A stretch of DNA of 64,000 nucleotides from Mytilus californianus (GCF_021869535.1 NW_026262712.1:44020001-44084000), one strand, 5' to 3'. Shown: positions 1 to 38,543, counted from the first letter of the stretch. The notes: generated by a model from the sequence alone, not told the origin. Numbers and translations are program-made.

Positions 1-1145
1 TTTCTTTTCGAGAACATTTTCACCATTGTTTTCATGTTTGCAACCGGAAGCTTTGCCACTCACTTTCAAGACTGATAACTCTGTTAAAAACGAAAATAAA
101 AATAACGATAATAATTTTTTAGTGACAAAAATACAATAATCCAACATTTTAATCAATCAAAATATTAAAAATAAATATTGAGTTTACGACACAAAATTTT
201 TCGTGTGCATGGTAATAATGCATGCGTGAAATTCTGTGCAGTGGAATAGTCCCGATCCCCCCTGAAGGAGGATGACCCCTTTCATGTTTTTGTTTAAAAA
301 AATTAAAACTTTGTACTCATATTATGCATTCAAATGTATGTCTTATTTCTTTATCTTTGAAGGTTTATAAATCAATTGGACTCCCTTTCATTTTTTTTTC
401 TTCAAAAAACTAAAATTTTGTAATCTTTATTATCTGTGTTTATTATGCATTCCAAATGTATGTCTTATTTTCTTTATCTTTAAAGGTTCATGCATCACTG
501 GGACTGTCTCCTAGACAGAAAACAATAAAAAAAAAGGGCTCTAGTATCAATATAAAAAAAGCAAAAGAAAAGGCACAAACCAAAGAAGCTAAGAGAAGAC
601 GTTTTTATTTAAAGCCGACTAGATCGTCAAAGACTGCTAGTAAAGAAATAAAGATAGGAAAAACTTATGAAAGTGAAATAGGTATAAACTAATATTAAAA
701 GGGTAACCACCATGACAGTTTTCCGAAATGTGATGTCAGAAACTATGTATTTGGTCACATGTAGATTTATGTTTTTATTTACCCTGAAAATTTGAATTTT
801 GAAATTATGTTTGGATCAATTCGGACATGACATAAACTTTCCTAATCTATAAATTTCGATATTTAAACAATCCATCGTCATATGTCATCAACTGAAATTA
901 CTATATATGCCTAAACATGATAAAATCTGCTGAATCTTAAAACATGTAAAAGTGACCAAAACTATGCCAATCCGATACTGTATACTATTATTTAAATAAA
1001 GTCTTGCTGAACCAACGCCTCTAAAGTTTTGTATAGGTAGGGATCTCTTTAATGGATACCGATACCAGTATGCAGGATTGTCATATGAAATAAATATAGA
1101 TACAACTAGATTGAAAACAACACTTGAGTGAACTGCAAATTTATT

Positions 1146-1186
1146 TGTCGACATGTTTCGCCGATTAGATCGGCGTCATCAGGACA
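1146..1186 (-). ncRNA. Minimal type I hammerhead ribozyme (PLE/retrozyme type)
   Basis: Minus strand reads UGUC-CUGAUGA-C-GCCGAU-CUA-AUCGGC-GAAA-C-AU-G-UC^GACA. Core CUGAUGA/GAAA/GUC is intact, stem I is UGUC:GACA, stem II is 6 bp, and stem III is a palindromic ACAUGU. One extra C follows the CUGAUGA box, a variant seen in PLE hammerheads. AATAAA follows directly. Confidence 0.85.
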
Positions 1187-1335
1187 AGGTACACAGTAAA
1201 TGAAATCCCTGAATTACAAAAAAAAAATAAAATCTAAAATTTAACGTCATAATGTAATTTATCTTGTCTATGTTGGTATTGGTATTGGTTACTTATGTAT
1301 AAATGTAATGGATCAAATAGAATATGTTAATAAAG

Positions 1336-2115
1336 TTATAAAATTGATATAATCAAGAGTTCAAATGTTATTGTCGACTGTTTTGAACTTGTAAAGATGT
1401 TGTAGATACCTCTGACTGATAATTGTGTCTTCCGTTTTTCCTCGGAAGGTTCATCTGTGACTGATAGTAGTGTCTTCCGTTTATCCTCGGAAGGTTCATC
1501 TCTGAATGATAATTGTGTCTTCCATTTATCATCGGTAGGTTCTTCTCTGCTTACAATTCCTCACTGGTACTGTCAACTGGTCCCTTGTATCTACTGTAAC
1601 TATTAATAACTTGGTATACGTCTTCACTTTCTTCAACTAAATAGCCGTAGCTGTTTGTGCTATAATTTGGTGGTCCGATGGTCTTTACATCAATTATATC
1701 ATCATCAGTCTTACGAGTCGCTGATGTGCAGTTCTTCTCTCAGTGTATCAATGATTGTCTGTACATGTGCAGGTACCTTGTGCGGGTTGACCGGAGTTGA
1801 AACTATTTTGAGGGTGCTGATACTACTTTAAATGTTGGTGTCAATTCATTTTTTAGCGGGCTTCTAATGGTGGAGTCTATTTTAATACTGGTTTAGCTGT
1901 GGCATTTGGTGTTGCAGTTTTTTCACTTAAGTCTGTTCCTGGGGTTTCTTGGTGTTTGGTCATTATGTGTTTCTTTGTTGCATATTTCCTGGTAAAATTA
2001 GCCGGGCAGTAGAGATTCGAAGATTGTTACCGTCGGTTCAATGAAGCTGAAATGGTGTTTACGTAGTGTGCTAATATTAGCAAACTTCTTGTCATATTTA
2101 AGGCATATTAATTCT
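1336..2115 (-). pseudogene. Decayed ORF with two C2H2 zinc fingers, Pro/Thr-rich and acidic tracts and three 15-aa repeats (probably mobile-element derived)
   Basis: Manual translation across frameshifts and stops: ICLK(Y)DKKFANISTLRKHHFSF...FE(C)LYCPANFTRKYATKKHIMTKH...K*TPPLEAR...LREELHISDS...DEPSEDKRKTLLSV repeats. Confidence 0.6.
1414..1548 (-). repeat. Three in-frame 45-bp tandem repeats (REEPTDDKWKTQLSF / RDEPSEDKRKTLLSV / TDEPSEEKRKTQLSV)
   Basis: Units at 1504-1548, 1459-1503 and 1414-1458, read directly. Confidence 0.9.
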
Positions 2116-6161: not shown

Positions 6162-6616
6162 TTATGTAAACCGATAGACATATAGTTCATTGGTGCTGTA
6201 AGATGGAGCAAACACTTCAACAAAAGAGTCTCCATCTACATCAGCAAATGATAGTTCACCGACAGTTCCATCGCCGGCATCTAAAAACATCATCATACTG
6301 TATGTCCAATCAGAAGGTTCGTTACTTAATGGTTCTAAGTAATACGCTTTGCCATCATCATCTCCGGATAGTAAAATTGAGGGCTTCGATCTGCAATAAA
6401 TTAATCATATTTATATGAATTTTAAATGAGATTTTTTTTATAACAAACCGGAGCATTGGCACGTTCAATTTACTCATACATGCATATTAAACAATGGTTT
6501 TTCTTCTTATAGACTGTCATCCCTCACTCCATTGCGACTCATAAGATAATATAAATAAATTATCAGAAAATCAAATATTCTAAATGATAATGATTAAGAA
6601 TAACATGCGAAAAGTG

Positions 6617-6660
<44 letters not shown>

Positions 6661-8713
6661 GCAGTAATTTTGCACTGTACCATATTCTTGAGTTCACTTA
6701 ATAATAAAGCAACGAAAACATACGCGTTAACTTTGGTATTTGGATACACCGGCATTGCTGCTCCTGGTGCTCCTTTCCCTGTTCCAGATTTTCCTGGTTT
6801 AAATCCTGCCGCTAATGAGTGTCTCTTGAAGTCTCCAGATCTATATAAAAATGTATAAACATGGTGATTATGGAACGGCAAGAAGACATCTTACCGTATA
6901 AAATAAAAACTGAAAAGGTTCCCCTTCCGAAAGATAACCCCCTATTTTTGGTTTAGTTCGTGCTACTCATTCTTTAGTTCTCAAATTTGTGTTATATATA
7001 TATTGGTGTTTGTCTTTTGGTTGTTGTTGTTGTTTTGCCATGGCTTTTTCAGTTCTTTTACGACTTATGAGTTTGAATGACCCTTTGTTATATACTGCCT
7101 ATCTTTTTAAACATTCGCTGTTTCCGGTATCAATTGATGAATTGTAAACTATGCTTTATTATTTGTGACAATACGATTAAGTTGAAAGAATCTAACAGAA
7201 AGTGCATATAAATCCGGAATGCGTCTAGAATGTTAAGAGTTTTTTTTTATTCTGTTCATTTTATTATCCCAGTTACATATTGGACGGGTGTCAAAGAAGA
7301 TGTTGTCAATAATTGAAACTAAATTAATATTTGTGTTTGATATATATCTATTGGCAACAATTTAGTGCATATACAGAACGAGGGGGAAAATAACAATCAA
7401 TGCAATATTGAGGGTCTGCAAAGTGGGTCAATTGGTATGAAGATTTTAAAGTATTCCAGAAAACAGGTAGGTTGAGATAAATGATACCTTGTGACAGACA
7501 TGAAAACTAACCCCCTCGATGAGATGTAAGGGTTGTTTTATTGCATATAGGCCAGGCCAAAATTACCCTATGCCAGATTCAAACCACCTGATTTATACAG
7601 TCAAATGGACGGCTCTCTTTATTTTGTGTAAGAAGTCCAGCTGACTGAATCAATCACATTGTTTACTTAACAAGAATACCAGTGGCGGATCCAGGGGGTT
7701 GGGTTGGGGGGGGGGGGGGGGTTGGAACCCCCCCTTTTTTGGACGATCAATGCATTTGAATGGGGACATATGGTTGGACCCCCCCCCCCCCCCCCCCCCC
7801 CCTTATCCTGGGTTGGAAACCCCCCTTTTGGAAAATGGCTGGATCTGCTCCTGAATACAGGGTCTTAAATATTTCAACGTAAAGCGACTAATACAAATAT
7901 TGTACCTAAAGTCTGAAGGTACTTCATAAGCGTAGAGGGACCCAGATTCACCATTATTAGTCACAAGTAAGTCTGGTTTACCATCATTGTTCAGATCAGC
8001 CACAGTCACATCAAACACATTACCAATGCTATTATCTATTACTCTGGATTTAATCTGAAATAGACATAACAGATATTCGCAAAAAAATATTATTAAAAAA
8101 AACGTAACATTTTGGTTAGGCCGAAGATAAAACTATTACTCTTTTCAACCATTTTGTTGACATACATGACTGTATGAGTGAAAAAAAACCTAACGGAAAG
8201 TTGATTCGTTATGATTGATCGGTTTTTCAAGAATTTATAATTGAAACTCAAATATCACATTCATTAACAAAGCAAGCATGAGGGACAAATAGTGTGCTTC
8301 GGGATAAATTTTGTTGAAATCTACAATATTTCTAGTACGAAAAGCACATTACAATTCAATAACGAGAAGAATATATTTCATTAATTATGTTTCATACGTT
8401 TTAAATCTTTAATTGTAATCACGGAGATGAAGGTATAGTAGCATTTATCTGGCATTCAAAATATTTTAATTCTTCCATCTTTGTTGAATATGTTTATTTC
8501 ACTGTTAAACCAATTAAATGATAATCTCGATACATATGGCAGGGATCTTTTTTTTTTATTATTTCACTGCCAAGTCCAAAAACTGTTTTAAATTAAACGA
8601 ACGTGACCACTGTTTGCGTTAGTGCAATCAGTTATTAACAAGCAATTCTTATCACAATAACGGTATAGTTTAATTGCCAAAGAGATAATTATTCACCAAA
8701 GACCAACAAAACG

Positions 8714-8757
<44 letters not shown>

Positions 8758-11700
8758 CACAGGGTCTTAAAAAATGACCAAAATCAATACCGTATACTAA
8801 GCTATAAATTGTCCTACCTTGACATTTTGGTAAACGAGACAACTTAAGGGAAAACATTAATTAAACTAAAACCATTACAGACAACTCAAAAGAAAGCTCA
8901 TGATTTACCGGATGTCTTTGGATATGCAAGAATGTGACGAGGTTAATCATGTTAGCGATCATCTCATTAATTTGTTTACCTTAACATGGCACAGAGGTTT
9001 AAAAGCATAACAAAAGAACACATCTTAGGTAACTGGCGAATAGAAATATGATCTATTAGTCTTAGATTTTTTTTATTAGTTGTTATTGGCTTTGAACTAG
9101 CTGTCAGTTAGTGCGAGTGCACTAAGATCTGTACTTGGTGTCTTTTTGTTATAGGGATCTATAAGTACCCGTCCACTTCCACTGTGTTTTCGTGAGATAT
9201 ATTTCTATATGAATCTATCTAATAAGTTAATCATTTTTCAAAGGAACCTGTATTTCAGTGGATGTCGTTTGCTTGCTGTGTAACATATTTGTTTTTCGTT
9301 CATTATTTTGTACATGAATTAGGACGTAAGTTTTCTCGTTTCAAATAATTTAATTTGTCATTTCGGGGCCTATTATAGCTGACTATGCGGTATGGGTTTT
9401 GCTCATTGTTGAAGGCCGTACGGTGACCTAAAGTTGTTAATTAAGTGTTGTCTCATTTGCAATCATATCACATCTTCTTATTTTTATACTTATGTCTTCT
9501 TTCACTCGGAAGTAAAATCCTTGCTAAAGCGAAGCTTCCGTTTGGCTACGCGGGATGTACAAGTACGCAGATACGTCCGGTCAGGCGTTAAATCTGATGC
9601 CTCGTGTACAGAGTGCCAATTTCTTTGATGGGTCCGTAAAAAATGGGGGGAGGGCGCTGCAAAGCAAAAACTCAGTTCTAGTCCAATTTATCCTGATTTA
9701 CCAATGGCAGTCCAAACTTCCCCGACCTCATCACGGACGGTCTCTATTACATGACCTACCTATAGTATTTATTAATAATTTGTTCCCATCGTCCTGAACA
9801 TGCATGCAATATTTACCGCTGGACGTTGAGCAACAAAAAATCAATCGATCATAAGAACAAACCAACTACATCAGTTTTAAAAGGGTTGACCCATTAGATC
9901 GACACGAAGCACTTAAATAACACTAATTACTGATCTAGTATTTGCATTTACTGATACCTAGTTCAAAATTACAAAAAAAATCATGTTTTAGTATTTTTCA
10001 TATTTTTGTTTCCTTGTGTTCATACTTAATGTTGAAGAACTTAACATCTAATTTTATAATACCTTTGATACGTCGGTCCAGTTTGCTATCTTATTATCAA
10101 CCCAATAAATCGTCAAACTAGATGTGAAAAACTGTGCAGCTATCAAACAGTCTCGTGGACCATCTGTCGTATTAAAAACTGCATCGATGACAAAGATGTC
10201 TGGACCATGTGCGATAACAGTTGGTCGCCAGGGTGTATAGTAATTCCCAGGATTTTCTAACCATAGCATTTCAGAATCTTTCCCTGTGTTTAAAAGGTAA
10301 AACAAGTTTTAAATTTAAGTAACAAGTAAAGAATAAAGTCATTAAGAGTGACATTTCATCAGGACCCCCATGTCACAGGGCCGTAGACCAAGAGTTGACT
10401 CGGATATAGAAATATTGTGATTGTATCGTCTTTCTCCGCTTGGGCCCATGCTGAACTAAAGCGCTCGCTTGACTGTGCGGGATATATACATACACAGACA
10501 CATCAGTTTTCTGCACAATGAAGAACATATGCAGTAGCTGTCCGGAGGTCAATATGCCGCTTGTTTCAAGGTAAAACTTCTGTCCCTATCAACGGACCTT
10601 AGTTTTCAAGTGGTAGTCCAAACATACCACCCTTTATGCAGGTCGACTCTACCTACTTGTATTGTTTGTTTAATTTTAACGTCCTGATCATAATGAATTA
10701 TTTGCCACTGAATGTTAAACATACATCAGTCAGAGCGCCCCCTTACTCAAGACAATGAGCTACTTTCAGGTTTCCATGGTTATTGACATGAACCTCACTC
10801 CTGGGAATATAATTAATTCTATCACAAATCGTTCTAATTTGTTGTAAATGAGGTATGTTTCGGGAAATATATTTAGAACCCGTCTGTTCACCACAATATA
10901 ATTAGCTTCATAATACCCGATCAACAGAACAATCCTCCGTATAGTCTCGTGTCAGTTTATTAGCATTATAAAAAGTACTAATAAAATCCGACTCAAAAAT
11001 CTATAAATCAATAAAGATCACAACTCCTGCACCCAATGTTGCTTTTGGAATGTTCACTTAAATTCCCTCACACGGATTTTACAATTGTCACTTCAAAATA
11101 ACATATGCATCATTTGCCCAACGGACAAGATTACGGAGAGTTCTTTTTAACATATCAAGTCTGAAGAATGCACTTTGTAAATACAACTAATTCACAAACT
11201 TTCTTGGGGAGATATTCAATATTTATAGATATTTTGTTTTGTTTTCGTACTGGTTCCCAGATATTATCTCTATGTTTCATCTCATAGAGATATAACTTGG
11301 GAATGTAATCATTTTTTTACGAAACTTCCTAGTTAAAGTGGCACAGTTTTAACCGTAAAAGTTCCTATGGGAAATTGCATTGTCTATATTAACACAAGCG
11401 CAACCTAAATGGATATTGATTCATTTGCATATTTTTCATGTTTTATAACAGCCCATTTCATTCAAGAAATCAGAAAAAATGATCCAGCATTGTTCTATAT
11501 GACAACTGCGGTCAAAACCGTATCAATCTAAATCAAATTGAAAATCTTCTAAGATTTAAAATTTAATTGGTGTTTTTTTCGTAACTATCTCAAATATAAA
11601 CAAACAAAAGATTTAAACAAGGTTTTTGGTCATTCTGAATTAAGATTCGTGCATTGTAAGGCACTCACATAAACCGAAAAACAGTATGATTGAAATACAG

Positions 11701-14022
11701 ATCACGTGTCCAACCTTCGCTGACAACGCTTCGTTTTTTCTGTTTACATTTTGGGAATCTCTGGTTTTGTTGTTAAGAATCGCACCTTCAAAAATTTGAC
11801 GGCAGAAATTTCACGAGTTGATATAATTATTACCTGAACTGAAAGTACAACGGATTGTTTTAAGTCAGATCTTTGCAAGCAGAGCATGGGCACAGGATAG
11901 TTTCATAATTAAATTTATCGAATAAATGCTCAACATTGTCACATTCATCTTAAACATCGAACTTATTAATTATCAAAGATACCAGGCTTATAATTTGATA
12001 CGCCAGACGCGCGTTTCGTCCACAAAAGACTCATCAGTGACGCTCAGATCAAAATAGTTTCAAAGCCAAACAAGTAAAAAGTTGAAGAGCATTGAGGACC
12101 CAAAATTCCAAAAAGTTGTGCCAATTACGGCTAAGGTAATCTATGCCAGGGATAAGAAAATCCTTAGTATTTTGAATAATTCATACTTTTGCAATCAGTA
12201 CATTTATAAAAATGACCATATAATTGATATTCATGTTAACACCGAAGTGCTGACTACATCGAACTAACCTATTCCTATAACAGGTTCCCTGGCTCTACAA
12301 GTAAGTATATCTAAGTCTCCATCTAAGTCCATATCTTTCCACACTACTCTGTGATAAAACCATTTTCCTGTTTGGTCGTCTGTTAGTTTGTAAGGTCCTT
12401 TCCCATCAATATCGACCAGGCTAATGGAACCATCTGTTTTAAATGGAACGAGAAATCCATCGGGAATTGCAACCATTGTTTTGTTGAAAACGGATCCTTT
12501 ATATTGAAATAAAAGAAGTCAAAGTATTAACATCTTCGTGAATATTGGTTGATTGTTGCTTGTTTAACGTCCAGTGGAAACTATTTCATGCATATTCAAC
12601 ACTGAATACAAAAGATCGGCGTTCAAAAAAATATTGTAATTAATAAATTTGTTAGGCATGTGAGTTGCGATTGAAAAATGAAAGTACGATTTCTAAAAGG
12701 CATATGCTTTTTCAGATTTTTTCTTGAAAATAACAGTAAGAACAAAACTCATCAAAGATAACAAGCTAATAACAAGCTAATAACAAGAAGCCAACGAATG
12801 CTTTTTCGGGGAACATTTTCAGCATTTTCCCATTAAAGATACATACTTTTAGAAGAATAACCATCAAATGATCTTATTTTGTTTAATCGGCAATTTTGCA
12901 TCTAAATTAAATTTAATATTAGTTTAAACTTATTTTATTGTTCAGAAAACTTATATAATATTGTTTGATTGACAAATGTTGCTAGCGCACGTTTAGCACT
13001 CTTGACTATATATTGGCGGTGGAGAGTGGAGATAACCACTGAACCTAGGCTGGAAAACAGGTCAAGATCAGAGTCGACCGTACCGTGCCATGATCAAGGT
13101 GCCAGCTCTCAAGTTTAATGTCGACAGGCGGGTGATCACCGTACTTTAATACGTATATCTTTAGGCCACCAGGCTCAATTTTTATTAAGGATATTTAAGA
13201 TCGGAAAATGTAGAGAGAGATTTACTATTTAATGAACATATTAGTAATTTTTGGTAATCTAACGTCCAGTGGAAAATAGTTCATGCATGTTGAGGACGAT
13301 GACCGTATTATTATACTGAACTAAATCTTTAAACTTCAACTAATTTTAATAAATTAATTTATAATGTGTAGGTTATGAATTATATGTTATAGCAGCATAA
13401 ATTTTTGTATAAAGGGACAATGATGATTAACAAACTATTATACAGTTGCTTGCTGTGTAGCAAAATCATTTTCAAATGCCTTATACTATAAAGCATTTCT
13501 ACGAAATGATAGTAAACTTTTTAGTTATTACAACTAATGCATGAAATACTTGCCACTGGACATTAAGTCAGTTCCAATAATTCAATCTCAATCTCAAGGG
13601 CAATTATATATAATATATTTTGGTACTGCTCTTAGATTAAATTAACTTAAAATTCTAACTTACTTAAAGTGTAATGTTTTACTTATATTTCGACCATACT
13701 TACTTGGAACTCCTGAAATCTCGTTTGGCCATGTTACTTTTGTTGTGACTATTTTTGGAATTATATTACTGCTGTTCGATAATAAGTGTTTCCCTACGTC
13801 CGGAACTATCTGTACAGTGTCTGTGCTGAACGGCACTGGATCAAATGTTGATATAAGCAAGTCATATTTGGAGGAGTCCCCAGTATTGTCAAAAATTTCG
13901 TACAATGACGTAAATCCAGGATATTTAATAGGAAACGACGTCACTTTAGTCAAATTGTATTTAAACGCAAGTACATGGCTGCTTAAAATAGCGACAACTG
14001 AGTATTTTAAAAATAAATTCAT
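6162..14022 (-). CDS. Intact 6-exon gene: 420-aa secreted FG-GAP/VCBS-repeat (Ca-binding beta-propeller) protein, uncharacterised
   Basis: Exons 14022-13704, 12496-12269, 10283-10063, 8054-7906, 6840-6724, 6390-6162. All introns are GT-AG with matching phases (1,1,0,2,2); total 1263 nt with no internal stop. N-terminal signal peptide MNLFLKYSVVAILSSHVLA; blades with DMDLDGDLD, DLNNDGKPD, DVDGDSFVE. Confidence 0.93.
6618..6657. repeat. (TA)n microsatellite in intron 5
   Basis: Read directly. Confidence 0.95.
6915..7110 (+). repeat. Family C 3' remnant
   Basis: cccttccgaaag...gttcgtgctact...gccatggc...gacttatgagtttgaatg motif series. Confidence 0.65.
7680..7853. mobile_element. MITE with CAGTGGCGGATCCAG-type TIRs and poly-G/poly-C interior
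   Basis: Left CAGTGGCGGATCCAG, right CTGGATCTGCTCCTG; AATAC on both flanks. Confidence 0.8.
8717..8754. repeat. (TA)n microsatellite
   Basis: Read directly. Confidence 0.95.
9066..9485 (+). repeat. Family B 3' remnant
   Basis: ttattagttgtt...gaactagctgtcag...gaaggccgtacggtgacc...gtctcatt..caatcata.cacatctt, as at 56365-56915. Confidence 0.8.
9495..9850 (+). mobile_element. Mollusc SINE-like repeat (reverse complement of 63128-63530)
   Basis: ccttgctaaag...cgtttggct..gcgggatgtaca...cgtcctgaacatgcatgcaatatttaccgctggacgttgagcaac with a caat tail. Confidence 0.7.
10370..10730 (+). mobile_element. Degenerate SINE-like repeat
   Basis: Shares the ttctgtccctatc and tatttgccactg.atgttaa 3' block with the other SINE copies. 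Confidence 0.5.
11964..12255 (-). mobile_element. Retrozyme-like (hammerhead-bearing) non-autonomous retroelement, about 292 bp, in intron 2 of the FG-GAP gene
   Basis: Flanked by direct repeat ACATCGAACT (11954-11963 and 12256-12265); carries the hammerhead at 12000-12043; no meaningful ORF. Confidence 0.85.
12000..12043 (-). ncRNA. Type I hammerhead ribozyme, intact core
   Basis: GCGUCA-CUGAUGA-GUC-UUUUGUG-GAC-GAAA-C-GCGC-G-UC^UGGCGU. Stem I is 6 bp (2 G:U), stem II is 3-4 bp, stem III is 2 bp with a palindromic GCGC loop. Predicted cut between 12006 and 12005. Confidence 0.92.
13000..13190 (-). mobile_element. Degenerate tRNA-derived SINE 5' part
   Basis: Minus strand begins gagcctggtggcctaaag (A-box-like). 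Confidence 0.4.
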
Positions 14023-36109: not shown

Positions 36110-38543
36110 GTGTGTTATGATTTTTCGATTACAAAATGAATATCAGTGTTTAAAAATCAACTAAAGTGTAAGACAAATCAATCATTAGTTTTTACGAAAA
36201 TACTAAAGATCTGTATTTAACAAAAATATCCTAAAACACAGATGGACAAAACAATACCATAAACTTGATAAAGTAATGCATGTTTTATTTTGGAATGTAT
36301 GTATATCAAGTTGTACCTAACATTATATATGTCAAGGACATACTTGAAATACTTTGTTCAGTATAAATTCTTTTTAGAGGAATTTCTTTATGCAGTTGAA
36401 AATTGTTCGACGTGCCTTTGTTAAATTTACTTGAAAATTAACGCTTGTACCTTTAGAATTGGAAATGGAAGTAAAGGAAACACTCTACCTTTACCTTCAA
36501 CTACGTAATTTCATTTTCTTTGTTAGTCTCAGTGGACGCCGCGATTCTATCATAGATCTTCAAGTAATTACCAAAAAGTAATACCATATACAAGACTTGC
36601 CTTTAAAAGCATTATCCTTTATTTTCCTTGGAAAAGCATTTCAACTATATTGGGATAAAGATGCCGCTAAATAAAGGCAACAGTAGTATACCGCTGTTCA
36701 AAAACTCATAAATCGATAGAGATAAAAACAAATCCGGGTTACAAACTAAAACTGAGGAAAACTAAGTAAGCGTTGTATCAGGCTTTGAAACTAAATTCTA
36801 TTAATATGAACGAACTCCTTTTCAACAGACTTTTGTTACTTTCGTTACTTAATTATGACTCATTTCTTGAATGTTACTAAGGTATGTTTAAAAATATAAA
36901 CAAAAAACTACACTTTTTTTTAAATACGTTTTGAAAGTGAAAAATTAATCATCTGATTGTAAACAATTACTTGCAAATGTGCCGTTAACTGTACATCACT
37001 TAAAGATGAGAATCAGGAACTTTTGATCACGTAAAATATTGTTTAGAAGCTGATATGCAGACATATGAGTTGGTAACCTTGTGGAGAGAAAAAGGAAGAT
37101 GGTCTTTACCAGTCTGATCAAATTAAACCTCTCAGCGCTTCTGTTTTCTGATATGTCGCGTAAACGATACCAAGTGAGAGGTTTGATTCTCATCAGACTG
37201 AGCTTTTATCATCGATAAAACAACAAGTGAACTTATCTCTGATTTCTGTTTTGCCGACATAACGATGGATGCCAATAGTGGAGCAGGTTTAACTAAACAT
37301 GATTTGCAAAATTAATGACATGTTCACATGATCAATACTTTTTTTTAAATTCAAAATTAATTTAGATAGAATAATTTTAAAATTTGAATCCATTGAAAAA
37401 TATCAATGTATGCCAGTGTGTAGTTATCTATCGAATCTATAAGGTTGTGTACATTGTGTCATTAAGTGAACCATTACACAACCTACCGACTTTTTGTATT
37501 ATGGATACTTAAAAGGATTCATAACGCACACAATCCGTAAGTAGATAAGACTACCTATGAATTGGTTATCACATACCTGATATATTGTCAGAAACAATCA
37601 TATATCAAATTTACCACATTTGTGTAGGACGGTTAAAACTAAACATTGAAGGTAATTATTTAGTTAAAGGACATATTTTTACTTTGATACAATATTTTTT
37701 GGACCATTAAGCCATTGACTGAAATATTAATATATTGTGACATTGCATTTTTCTGACATATGTTTCTCCACATTATTATTATTATATAGATAACAACAAT
37801 ATATATAATACATATATAATCAAGACACTCCAATTGATACATATAATTATGTATGTTCAATTTAACAACGTTGTAACTTATTTGGTAGTATCGTGTAATT
37901 TTCTTCTGCACACCCAGATTATAAGTCGATTACAAGTCTCAAGAATAATCCCTCTATACTTTTGCTCGATTTTAAATTTAAGGAAGCAACATACCTTAAA
38001 CATTTGAAAGCATCTAAACCAATAAAGGACAAAGCCATACGTGTCGTATCCAACTCCATAGTTTACTAATTTTTATTTCGTAATTTATTTGCTGTTTAGG
38101 CGTTACACACCAACAATGATATTTGCCAAGGTAGAACAGTCTATAATGTGTCTAAATACTATGCTGAATTTGAGATTAACTTGTATTTTCGTGCTTTAAA
38201 TATTTAAATATCAATATGTTTGTTACATTGATTGGTCTTTTGAAATGAAATTGTATACCAAATAATAAGCTTGTGACGTTCAAGATCCAATAATAACATT
38301 CTTGAGATGTTTTAAAAATGATCTTTACAATGAATGTGAATAGAAAAAAACAAGTAAACGTAAATTTAAACATGTGAAAGTATGATGCCCTTTCAAGATA
38401 ATCTACAGAGCAATGTTCTAAATTTTTAGAATTATGTAAAATATAAGATATACACATATTAAACTGTTTGAAATGTAAACCTCATTGTGACTAATGTAAC
38501 CTTACAGTAAATACATTAACAGATTAACGGTTCCAATTGTACT

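What the first reader, a model, noticed from the sequence alone, without database searches (positions are those of the whole stretch)
11954..12269. Sense-strand self-cleaving hammerhead retrozyme inserted right beside a 5' splice site of an intact gene
Seen: a 292-bp element with an intact type I hammerhead (12000-12043) lies in intron 2 of the FG-GAP gene, on the transcribed strand. It is flanked by a 10-bp direct repeat (ACATCGAACT) whose upstream copy occupies intron positions +4 to +13, so the element starts 13 nt after the GT donor and the predicted cut is about 260 nt into the intron. Known: non-LTR retrozymes with minimal type I hammerheads occur in Mytilus and other metazoans; those with a 2-bp stem III and palindromic loop (here GCGC) cleave poorly as monomers and well as dimers. 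Inference: the host pre-mRNA carries a latent, dimer- or trans-activatable cleavage site, which could couple retrozyme RNA abundance to this gene's output or promote premature termination. It may also be a presence/absence polymorphism.
Basis: partly seen in the sequence, partly recalled or inferred. Interest (0 to 1): 0.8.

Follow-up and report, generated by a model that had tools for sequence, protein, structure and literature searches.

The report
Solo mussel retrozyme copy in intron
This is one truncated copy of a published, very abundant mussel mobile element that carries a self-cutting hammerhead RNA motif; it sits in the sense direction just inside an intron of an intact FG-GAP gene, and nothing found here shows that it affects that gene.

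Summary
A full-length type I hammerhead lies at 12043..12000 on the minus strand (Rfam RF00163, 33.2 bits against a gathering score of 34, E 1.6e-6). It sits in a 292-bp element (11964-12255) flanked by an exact 10-bp duplication found nowhere else in the window. The element is in the sense direction and starts 13 nt behind the G|GTTAGT donor of exon 2 of an open six-exon FG-GAP gene.

It is a 0.82-unit, 5'-truncated solo copy of a 355-bp tandem-repeat family, with about 4,800 first-look candidates in this 1.65-Gb genome. This is the mussel non-LTR retrozyme of Cervera & de la Peña 2020. The hammerhead differs by one base from their Mg353 construct, which self-cleaves with a single hammerhead at about 0.1 per min.

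With one hammerhead the copy cannot release a circle. It is about 5% diverged from the family consensus and is present in contigs of at least one other individual. The only RNA run laid showed no reads on the gene, so cleavage and any effect on expression remain untested. Published work shows that slow intronic hammerheads do not block splicing. The scan already holds 17 notes on hammerhead/retrozyme elements in introns elsewhere in this genome. Verdict: an ordinary passenger insertion.

The parts
11964..12255 (-). Solo retrozyme copy of 292 bp. It corresponds to positions ~30 to ~322 of the 355-bp family unit, so it is 5'-truncated and ends at the family's usual 3' end. GC 0.346, no long ORF.
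12000..12043 (-). Type I hammerhead ribozyme motif with an intact core. It is identical to the published Mg353 hammerhead except for one A>G, which turns a stem II U-A pair into U-G.
12005..12006 (-). Predicted self-cleavage site: GUC (12008..12006), then the cut, then U at 12005.
   Evidence: alignment; (cleavage site marked in Mg353 at the same GTC|TGGCGT)
12256..12265 (-). Upstream copy of the 10-bp target-site duplication (AGTTCGATGT on the minus strand). It fills intron 2 positions +4 to +13.
11954..11963 (-). Downstream copy of the 10-bp target-site duplication.
12269..12496 (-). Exon 2 of the FG-GAP gene (weak FG-GAP_3 match). The donor is G|GTTAGT in phase 1. Two paralogs keep a phase-1 donor within 1-2 codons of it.
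10284..12268 (-). Intron 2, 1985 nt (1683 nt without the insert and one repeat copy). It also holds another high-copy repeat at about 11169-11450.
10063..10283 (-). Exon 3. The acceptor is ACAG|GG, which joins exon 2 in frame (..PVIGI-G-KDSEM..).
13704..14022 (-). Exon 1, with the start codon and a hydrophobic N-terminus that looks like a signal peptide. The donor is A|GTAAGT in phase 1.
6162..8054 (-). Exons 4-6 (8054-7906, 6840-6724, and 6390 or 6297 to 6162). Exon 4 matches Pfam FG-GAP above its threshold. The whole model has 420 or 389 codons and no internal stop.

Best explanation
This is a dead-on-arrival solo copy of the known mussel non-LTR retrozyme. A retrozyme RNA, either circular or multimeric, was reverse-transcribed at a nicked target from the family's usual 3' start point. 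Copying stopped after 0.82 of a unit. The cDNA was joined with a 10-bp target-site duplication, 13 nt behind the 5' splice site of intron 2 of an FG-GAP gene, in the sense direction. The first 13 intron bases, which include the donor consensus, were left untouched.

When the gene is transcribed, the intron RNA carries one sequence-intact hammerhead. This may cut itself slowly (inferred from the near-identical Mg353 ribozyme, about 0.1 per min in vitro). With only one ribozyme, no unit-length RNA or circle can be released. A slow cut inside an intron is not expected to stop splicing. The copy is therefore most likely a neutral passenger.

Shown: identity, anatomy, orientation, the duplication, family membership and an open host gene. 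Inferred: the insertion mechanism, self-cleavage of this copy, and the lack of effect on the gene.
For: - Hammerhead: full-length Rfam match. It differs by one base from the experimentally self-cleaving Mg353 hammerhead, and the published primer 109R matches 12006-12030 with 1 mismatch.
- Family: about 4,838 first-look candidates in the genome (72 scored matches at E <= 0.001) and arrays of period 355 bp. This matches the ~5000 hammerheads in 350-390-bp repeats reported for M. galloprovincialis.
- Insertion ends: 27 of 30 sampled insertions end at unit positions 318-329. Their 5' ends are scattered and their lengths run from 0.82 to about 4 units. The window copy ends at the common 3' end. That end lies 41 nt past the cleavage site, so the template was not a cleaved linear monomer.
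- Duplication: an exact 10-bp repeat, unique in the window.
- Truncation point: contigs of other family copies run on into the missing 5' part exactly at 12257 (table 7).
- Age and spread: the copy is 94.5% identical to the consensus of 49 sampled copies. The 3' junction is bridged in a contig of another sample at the same depth as the flanks (table 8).
- Host gene: six exons with GT..AG introns of matching phase, 420 or 389 codons and no stop. FG-GAP Pfam hits. Paralogs keep a phase-1 donor within 1-2 codons of this one and have no retrozyme behind it.
- Splicing: an intron cut by a slow hammerhead is still spliced in vivo; only fast ribozymes abort splicing (Dye 2006 and Fong 2009, as reported in PMC2995048).
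- The authors' model already holds that retrozymes lack promoters and are transcribed by read-through.
Against: - No RNA evidence either way. The one RNA run laid (about 6% of it read) has no reads on the exons, and its reads on the element are partial matches from other copies.
- The hammerhead core is intact and the copy lacks the 5' unit segment GTTTCGTCC, which is complementary to the ribozyme core. Cleavage of the pre-mRNA is therefore quite possible.
- An intronic ribozyme can affect output: the CPEB3 ribozyme does so in mouse (PMC10919898, abstract only).
- Nearest-neighbour folding prefers a non-hammerhead hairpin for this motif (-13.1 against -5.7 kcal/mol). The same holds for the active Mg353 motif, so folding decides nothing.
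- Most other solo copies examined show no clear duplication; only 2 of 10 do. The integration mechanism is therefore not uniform.
Confidence: 0.8

Rival explanations
1. The intronic hammerhead is inactive alone. It is switched on when it pairs through its palindromic stem III (ACGCGCGU) with a second hammerhead supplied in trans by abundant retrozyme RNA. Retrozyme RNA level would then set how much of this gene's pre-mRNA is cut.
For: The 8-nt stem III segment is self-complementary, at -13.3 kcal/mol as a duplex. For the family consensus motif, the lowest-energy dimer is a double hammerhead with an intermolecular stem III. Mussel retrozyme circles are reported as very abundant in tissues. Amphibian type I hammerheads do work as dimers.
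Against: A single-hammerhead mussel construct with the same stem III cleaves on its own, and the authors class invertebrate motifs as monomer-active. Retrozyme RNA is mostly circular and highly self-paired. An intron cut slowly is still spliced. No RNA ends or expression data exist for this gene. Many other intronic copies lie in both orientations in this genome (unchecked notes).
Confidence: 0.05
2. The hammerhead cuts constitutively as a monomer in the nascent intron and measurably lowers the gene's mRNA. This would be an insertion with a mild cost, or a co-opted brake like the intronic CPEB3 ribozyme.
For: The core is intact and one base from an active ribozyme. The copy lacks the unit's segment complementary to the core. 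The cut site is 263 nt behind the donor and 1722 nt ahead of the acceptor, so the intron is exposed for some time. There is a precedent in the CPEB3 ribozyme.
Against: The rate of the near-identical ribozyme is slow, about 0.1 per min. Slow hammerheads placed in introns did not reduce splicing. There is no sign of selection: the copy is 5% diverged like its neighbours in the family ranking, and 21 of 64 sampled family hammerheads have lost the core pattern. No expression data.
Confidence: 0.12
3. The element is not an insertion by retrotransposition. It would be a fragment of a tandem array left by deletion or recombination, with the 10-bp repeat arising by chance.
For: Most other solo copies examined lack a clear duplication.
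Against: The 10-bp repeat is exact, abuts both ends and occurs nowhere else in 64 kb, against 0.08 expected. The 3' end coincides with the family's common insertion end. Paralogous introns have no such element.
Confidence: 0.02

Closest known systems
Mytilus galloprovincialis non-LTR retrozyme (genomic clone Mg353; Cervera & de la Peña, Nucleic Acids Res 2020, PMC7229834)
   Same: Same hammerhead apart from one base, and the same cleavage site context GTC|TGGCGTAT. Unit length of about 355 bp against 353 bp. Thousands of copies in tandem arrays, low GC, non-coding. The duplication is longer than 4 bp.
   Different: This copy is a solo, 5'-truncated 0.82 unit with one ribozyme, so it cannot yield a unit-length circle. 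The rest of the unit is only roughly 80% like Mg353, judged by eye.
Amphibian satellite 2 / axolotl retrozymes with dimer-dependent hammerheads
   Same: Type I hammerhead with a very short helix III capped by a palindromic tetraloop, in tandem repeats of about 330-350 bp.
   Different: The amphibian motifs cleave poorly as monomers and well as dimers. The mussel motif was shown to cleave in a single-ribozyme construct.
Conserved intronic ribozymes of amniotes (intronic hammerheads, de la Peña & García-Robles 2010; CPEB3 HDV-like ribozyme)
   Same: A self-cleaving motif on the sense strand of an intron of a protein-coding gene.
   Different: Those are single, deeply conserved motifs thought to be co-opted. 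This one is a member of a repeat family with thousands of candidate copies, has ordinary divergence and shows no evidence of conservation or function.
5'-truncated non-LTR (LINE/SINE/Penelope-like) insertions made by target-primed reverse transcription
   Same: Fixed 3' end, variable 5' end and a 10-bp target-site duplication.
   Different: No poly(A) or other recognisable tail. The template carries a ribozyme and can be longer than one unit, which points to a circular or multimeric RNA. The partner element supplying the reverse transcriptase is unknown.

Membership tests
Metazoan non-LTR retrozyme (Cervera & de la Peña 2020) | Canonical type I hammerhead with conserved core CUGANGA / GAAA / RUH and three helices | tested here: met
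   Rfam RF00163 matched over the full model at 33.2 bits, E 1.6e-6. Core and helices were read directly.
Metazoan non-LTR retrozyme (Cervera & de la Peña 2020) | Short tandem repeats of 150-450 bp, each with a hammerhead | tested here: met
   Met for the family: arrays of period 355 bp. This particular copy is solo and 0.82 of a unit, so it is a derivative insertion and not an array.
Metazoan non-LTR retrozyme (Cervera & de la Peña 2020) | Non-coding, low GC (<50%), no LTR | tested here: met
   GC is 0.346. The longest open stretch is 43 codons on the sense strand and 66 on the antisense. No terminal repeats within the element. PBS and PPT were not tested.
Metazoan non-LTR retrozyme (Cervera & de la Peña 2020) | Target-site duplication, when present, longer than 4 bp | tested here: met
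   Exact 10-bp duplication.
Metazoan non-LTR retrozyme (Cervera & de la Peña 2020) | Sequence kinship with the characterised mussel element | tested here: met
   The hammerhead is identical to Mg353 at 43 of 44 positions. The published primer 109R matches with 1 mismatch. The whole-unit alignment was not run.
Metazoan non-LTR retrozyme (Cervera & de la Peña 2020) | Expressed and processed into circular RNA | not testable with these tools
   RNA reads on the element are partial matches from other copies. A single ribozyme cannot excise a unit.
Dimer-dependent (double) hammerhead | Little cleavage as a single motif, efficient cleavage as a dimer | not testable with these tools
   The published single-motif construct with the same helix III cleaves at about 0.1 per min, which speaks against membership. 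This copy itself was not assayed.
Co-opted intronic ribozyme (as in amniote intronic hammerheads or CPEB3) | Conservation of the motif at the orthologous intron across species | not tested
Paralogous introns lack the element.

The most novel reading that the evidence does not exclude
The sense-strand hammerhead 263 nt into intron 2 is cut in trans-assisted fashion: a double hammerhead forms with abundant retrozyme RNA. Retrozyme RNA load would then tune, or prematurely end, transcripts of this FG-GAP gene. By extension the same would apply to the many other genes with sense intronic copies.
Probability: 0.04. Interest if true: 0.6.

Novelty: new member of a known kind. Interest (0 to 1): 0.15.

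Why it matters
As it stands it matters little. It is one more copy of a published mussel retrozyme family, and sense-strand intronic copies appear common in this genome.

It would matter if such copies were shown to cut host pre-mRNAs in vivo. Thousands of ribozyme-bearing insertions would then form a genome-wide layer of transcript processing tied to a mobile element.

One by-product may help in looking for the still unknown element that mobilises metazoan retrozymes. Insertions of this family share a fixed 3' end 41 nt past the cleavage site and have scattered 5' ends.

Tried and rejected
- Rfam at gathering thresholds over the whole window gave nothing. The motif scores 0.8 bit under the threshold, as does much of the family.
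- Minimum-free-energy folding of the motif and of the 292-nt element does not give the hammerhead fold. The same is true of the active Mg353 motif, so folding is uninformative here.
- RNA evidence was sought with one search for runs and one laying of reads. There were no reads on the exons, no molecule ends at 12005/12006 and no exon 2-exon 3 joint. Expression, splicing and cleavage remain untested. The reads on the element are cross-matches from other repeats.
- No joint skipping the 302 bp of an empty allele was listed in three contig sets. Nine joints were not shown, and contigs drop rare variants, so absence is not proven.
- Target-site duplications were sought at nine other solo copies. 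Only one (L026, 9 bp) was clear.
- I looked for further copies or other hammerheads in the window. There are none of this family. Rfam found nothing at 900-2400, where another note places a hammerhead.
- The big protein searches were not used. The gene's family was clear enough from Pfam on single exons and from paralogs.
- The joined coding sequence was built only inside a script to check the frame and was sent to no search tool.
- One script printed far too much by mistake. Its coordinates were recomputed cleanly.

Full report
**What is there**

The stretch reads as a hammerhead only on the minus strand. Rfam's type I hammerhead model (RF00163) matches 12043..12000 over its whole length at 33.2 bits, E 1.6e-6. 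That is 0.8 bit under the gathering score of 34, which is why the whole-window scan at gathering thresholds was blank. Other copies of the same repeat family score 29.7 to 35.3 bits, so the family as a whole sits around the threshold.

Read directly, the motif has:
- stem I of 6 bp, two of them G-U;
- the CUGAUGA box;
- stem II GUCU/GGAC, with a 5-nt loop;
- GAAA;
- a helix III of A-U and C-G capped by GCGC;
- GUC, then the cut between 12006 and 12005.

The 10-mer ACATCGAACT occurs exactly twice in the 64 kb, at 11954-11963 and 12256-12265, against 0.08 expected. The two copies abut a 292-bp element at 11964-12255.

**The host gene**

Minus-strand open frames carry FG-GAP repeats. Pfam FG-GAP scores 31.3 bits on exon 4, above its threshold, and FG-GAP_3 matches weakly on exons 2, 4 and 6. 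I searched exon by exon only.

A six-exon model has GT..AG introns of matching phase: 14022-13704, 12496-12269, 10283-10063, 8054-7906, 6840-6724, and 6390 or 6297 to 6162. It gives 420 or 389 codons with no internal stop. The joined sequence was built only in a script to check the frame and was sent to no search tool.

The exon 2 donor is G|GTTAGT, with the last exon base at 12269. It joins exon 3 in frame (..PVIGI-G-KDSEM..). Two paralogs in the same genome (70% and 51% identity over exon 2) keep a phase-1 GTAAG donor within one or two codons of this position. Neither has a retrozyme behind it.

The upstream repeat copy therefore fills intron positions +4 to +13 and the element starts at +14. 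The cut would fall 263 nt into a 1985-nt intron, 1722 nt ahead of the acceptor. Gene and ribozyme are on the same strand.

**What the element is**

The 292 bp have about 4,838 first-look candidates in this 1.65-Gb, 175-contig genome. The 72 scored matches are 90-96% identical to the query, and the best full-length ones 91-95%. Many lie head to tail, in arrays of period 355 bp.

This matches the published mussel retrozyme. Cervera & de la Peña (PMC7229834) report about 5000 type I hammerheads in the M. galloprovincialis genome, in repeats of 350-390 bp. These are expressed as abundant circular RNAs, and a cloned genomic repeat self-cleaves at about 0.1 per min. Their supplement gives that clone, Mg353. 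Its hammerhead and cleavage context (..GAGCGTCACTGATGAGTCTTTTGTAGACGAAACGCGCGTC|TGGCGTAT..) differ from the window's by a single A>G, which turns a stem II U-A pair into U-G. Their primer 109R matches 12006-12030 with one mismatch. The rest of the unit is visibly homologous by eye.

**How it got there**

I compared 30 sampled insertions with a full 355-bp unit.
- Twenty-seven end at unit positions 318-329.
- Their 5' ends are scattered over the unit.
- Their lengths run from 0.82 to about 4 units.

The window copy runs from unit position 30 to about 322, so it is a 5'-truncated insertion with the family's usual 3' end. Contigs of other copies run on into the missing 5' part exactly at 12257 (table 7).

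The common 3' end lies 41 nt past the cleavage site. The template therefore cannot have been a self-cleaved linear monomer. A circular or multimeric RNA copied from a fixed start fits the model the authors proposed.

The exact 10-bp duplication fits target-primed reverse transcription. Among nine other solo copies only one showed a clear duplication. The authors likewise write 'when present'.

**Age and spread**

The copy is 94.5% identical to the consensus of 49 sampled copies, in the lower part of their range. Its hammerhead carries two changes from this genome's consensus motif, neither in the core. Of 64 sampled family hammerheads, 43 keep the core pattern.

In contigs of another sample (X2), a 632-nt piece bridges the 3' junction by 33 nt. 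A 185-nt piece reaches 18 nt into the 5' end. Both have the same depth as the single-copy flanks (about 6). A third set (X8) reaches 26 nt into the 5' end. No joint skipping the 302 bp was listed.

The insertion is therefore not private to the assembled individual. Polymorphism is not excluded: nine joints were not shown, and in X8 the junction piece has about half the depth of its neighbour.

**Does it do anything?**

No data here speak to that. The only RNA run laid (about 6% of it read) has no reads on the exons, no exon-exon joint and no molecule ends at 12005/12006. The reads on the element are partial matches from other repeats. Several match only the hammerhead itself, at 12000-12045.

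Mg353 has one hammerhead with the same helix III and cleaves on its own. The authors class invertebrate motifs as monomer-active and the amphibian ones as dimer-dependent.

A double hammerhead is physically possible. The 8-nt ACGCGCGU is self-complementary, at -13.3 kcal/mol as a duplex. It also appears as the lowest-energy dimer of the consensus motif. That is no evidence that it happens on this pre-mRNA.

Energy folding prefers a non-hammerhead hairpin for the window motif and the active Mg353 motif alike, so it decides nothing.

Two points bear on consequences. With a single ribozyme the copy cannot release a unit or a circle. And published in vivo work, as reported in PMC2995048, found that an intron cut by a hammerhead is spliced as well as an intact one; only a fast ribozyme aborts splicing. 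The counter-example is the CPEB3 intronic ribozyme, whose inhibition raises expression (abstract only).

Given a rate of about 0.1 per min and an untouched donor consensus, the most likely outcome is no measurable effect. This step is inferred, not shown.

**Context in this scan**

The scan's notes list 17 findings on hammerhead/retrozyme elements in introns of this genome. The eight shown include both sense and antisense copies. Two were followed up and judged ordinary passengers, one of them in a gene said to splice normally. I did not check those notes. They agree with my reading and did not change it.

**Verdict**

The identity (retrozyme, sense strand, next to the donor, real duplication) is supported. 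The regulatory reading is untested and unlikely. This is a new copy of a known kind, of low interest. The fixed 3' end of the family's insertions is a small lead for finding the element that mobilises them.

Noticed in passing
L001-L030 (30 loci of the family in G000), e.g. L010:1114-2146: Insertions of the retrozyme family share a fixed 3' end: unit positions 318-329 in 27 of 30, ending ..GATAACTATT, 41 nt past the hammerhead cut. Their 5' ends are scattered and their lengths run from 0.82 to about 4 units. This looks like reverse transcription of a circular or multimeric RNA from one defined start point. It could help identify the unknown mobilising element.
   Followed up: partly
L010:1114-1145 and unit positions 1-29 of the 355-bp unit; absent from the window copy (it would lie above 12255): The unit's first ~30 nt begin GTTTCGTCC, the complement of the hammerhead core segment GGACGAAAC. 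With the preceding GGAC they form a GGACG/CGTCC hairpin. The window copy lacks this possible blocker. Its effect on folding of the full unit was not computed.
   Followed up: no
window 12000-12045: RNA reads and contigs match only the hammerhead itself and diverge on both sides (loose ends at 11999 and 12045). Other expressed repeat families in this organism therefore carry nearly the same ribozyme, perhaps the second hammerhead family reported for Mytilus.
   Followed up: no
window 11169-11450 (intron 2) and 13425-13566 (intron 1): Other very high-copy repeats, with summed contig depth in the tens of thousands. The one at 13425-13566 draws RNA reads with a strong strand bias (about 25 against 2) and loose ends at 13535-13537 and 13565-13567, so only a core of about 30 nt is shared.
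   Followed up: no
window 1140-2115: Another first-stage note places a hammerhead at the end of a zinc-finger ORF cassette here. Rfam finds no ribozyme in 900-2400 even at E up to 1, and a simple core pattern finds none. Minimal Penelope-type variants could escape both checks.
   Followed up: partly
L032 (G000:C132:91955188-91955418) and L033 (G000:C1:97208680-97208913): Two paralogs of the FG-GAP gene (70% and 51% identity over exon 2), with the same phase-1 intron position.
   Followed up: partly
window about 7700-7800 (intron 4, minus strand): Long G runs and C runs (more than 20 nt each) next to each other, giving spurious proline- and glycine-rich ORFs. There are also (TA)n runs near 6600-6650 and 8700-8760.
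   Followed up: no
window 36752-36793 (+): A loose hammerhead-like core pattern (CTGAGGA..GAAA..) turned up in a regular-expression scan. Rfam does not support it at gathering level, so it is probably chance.
   Followed up: no
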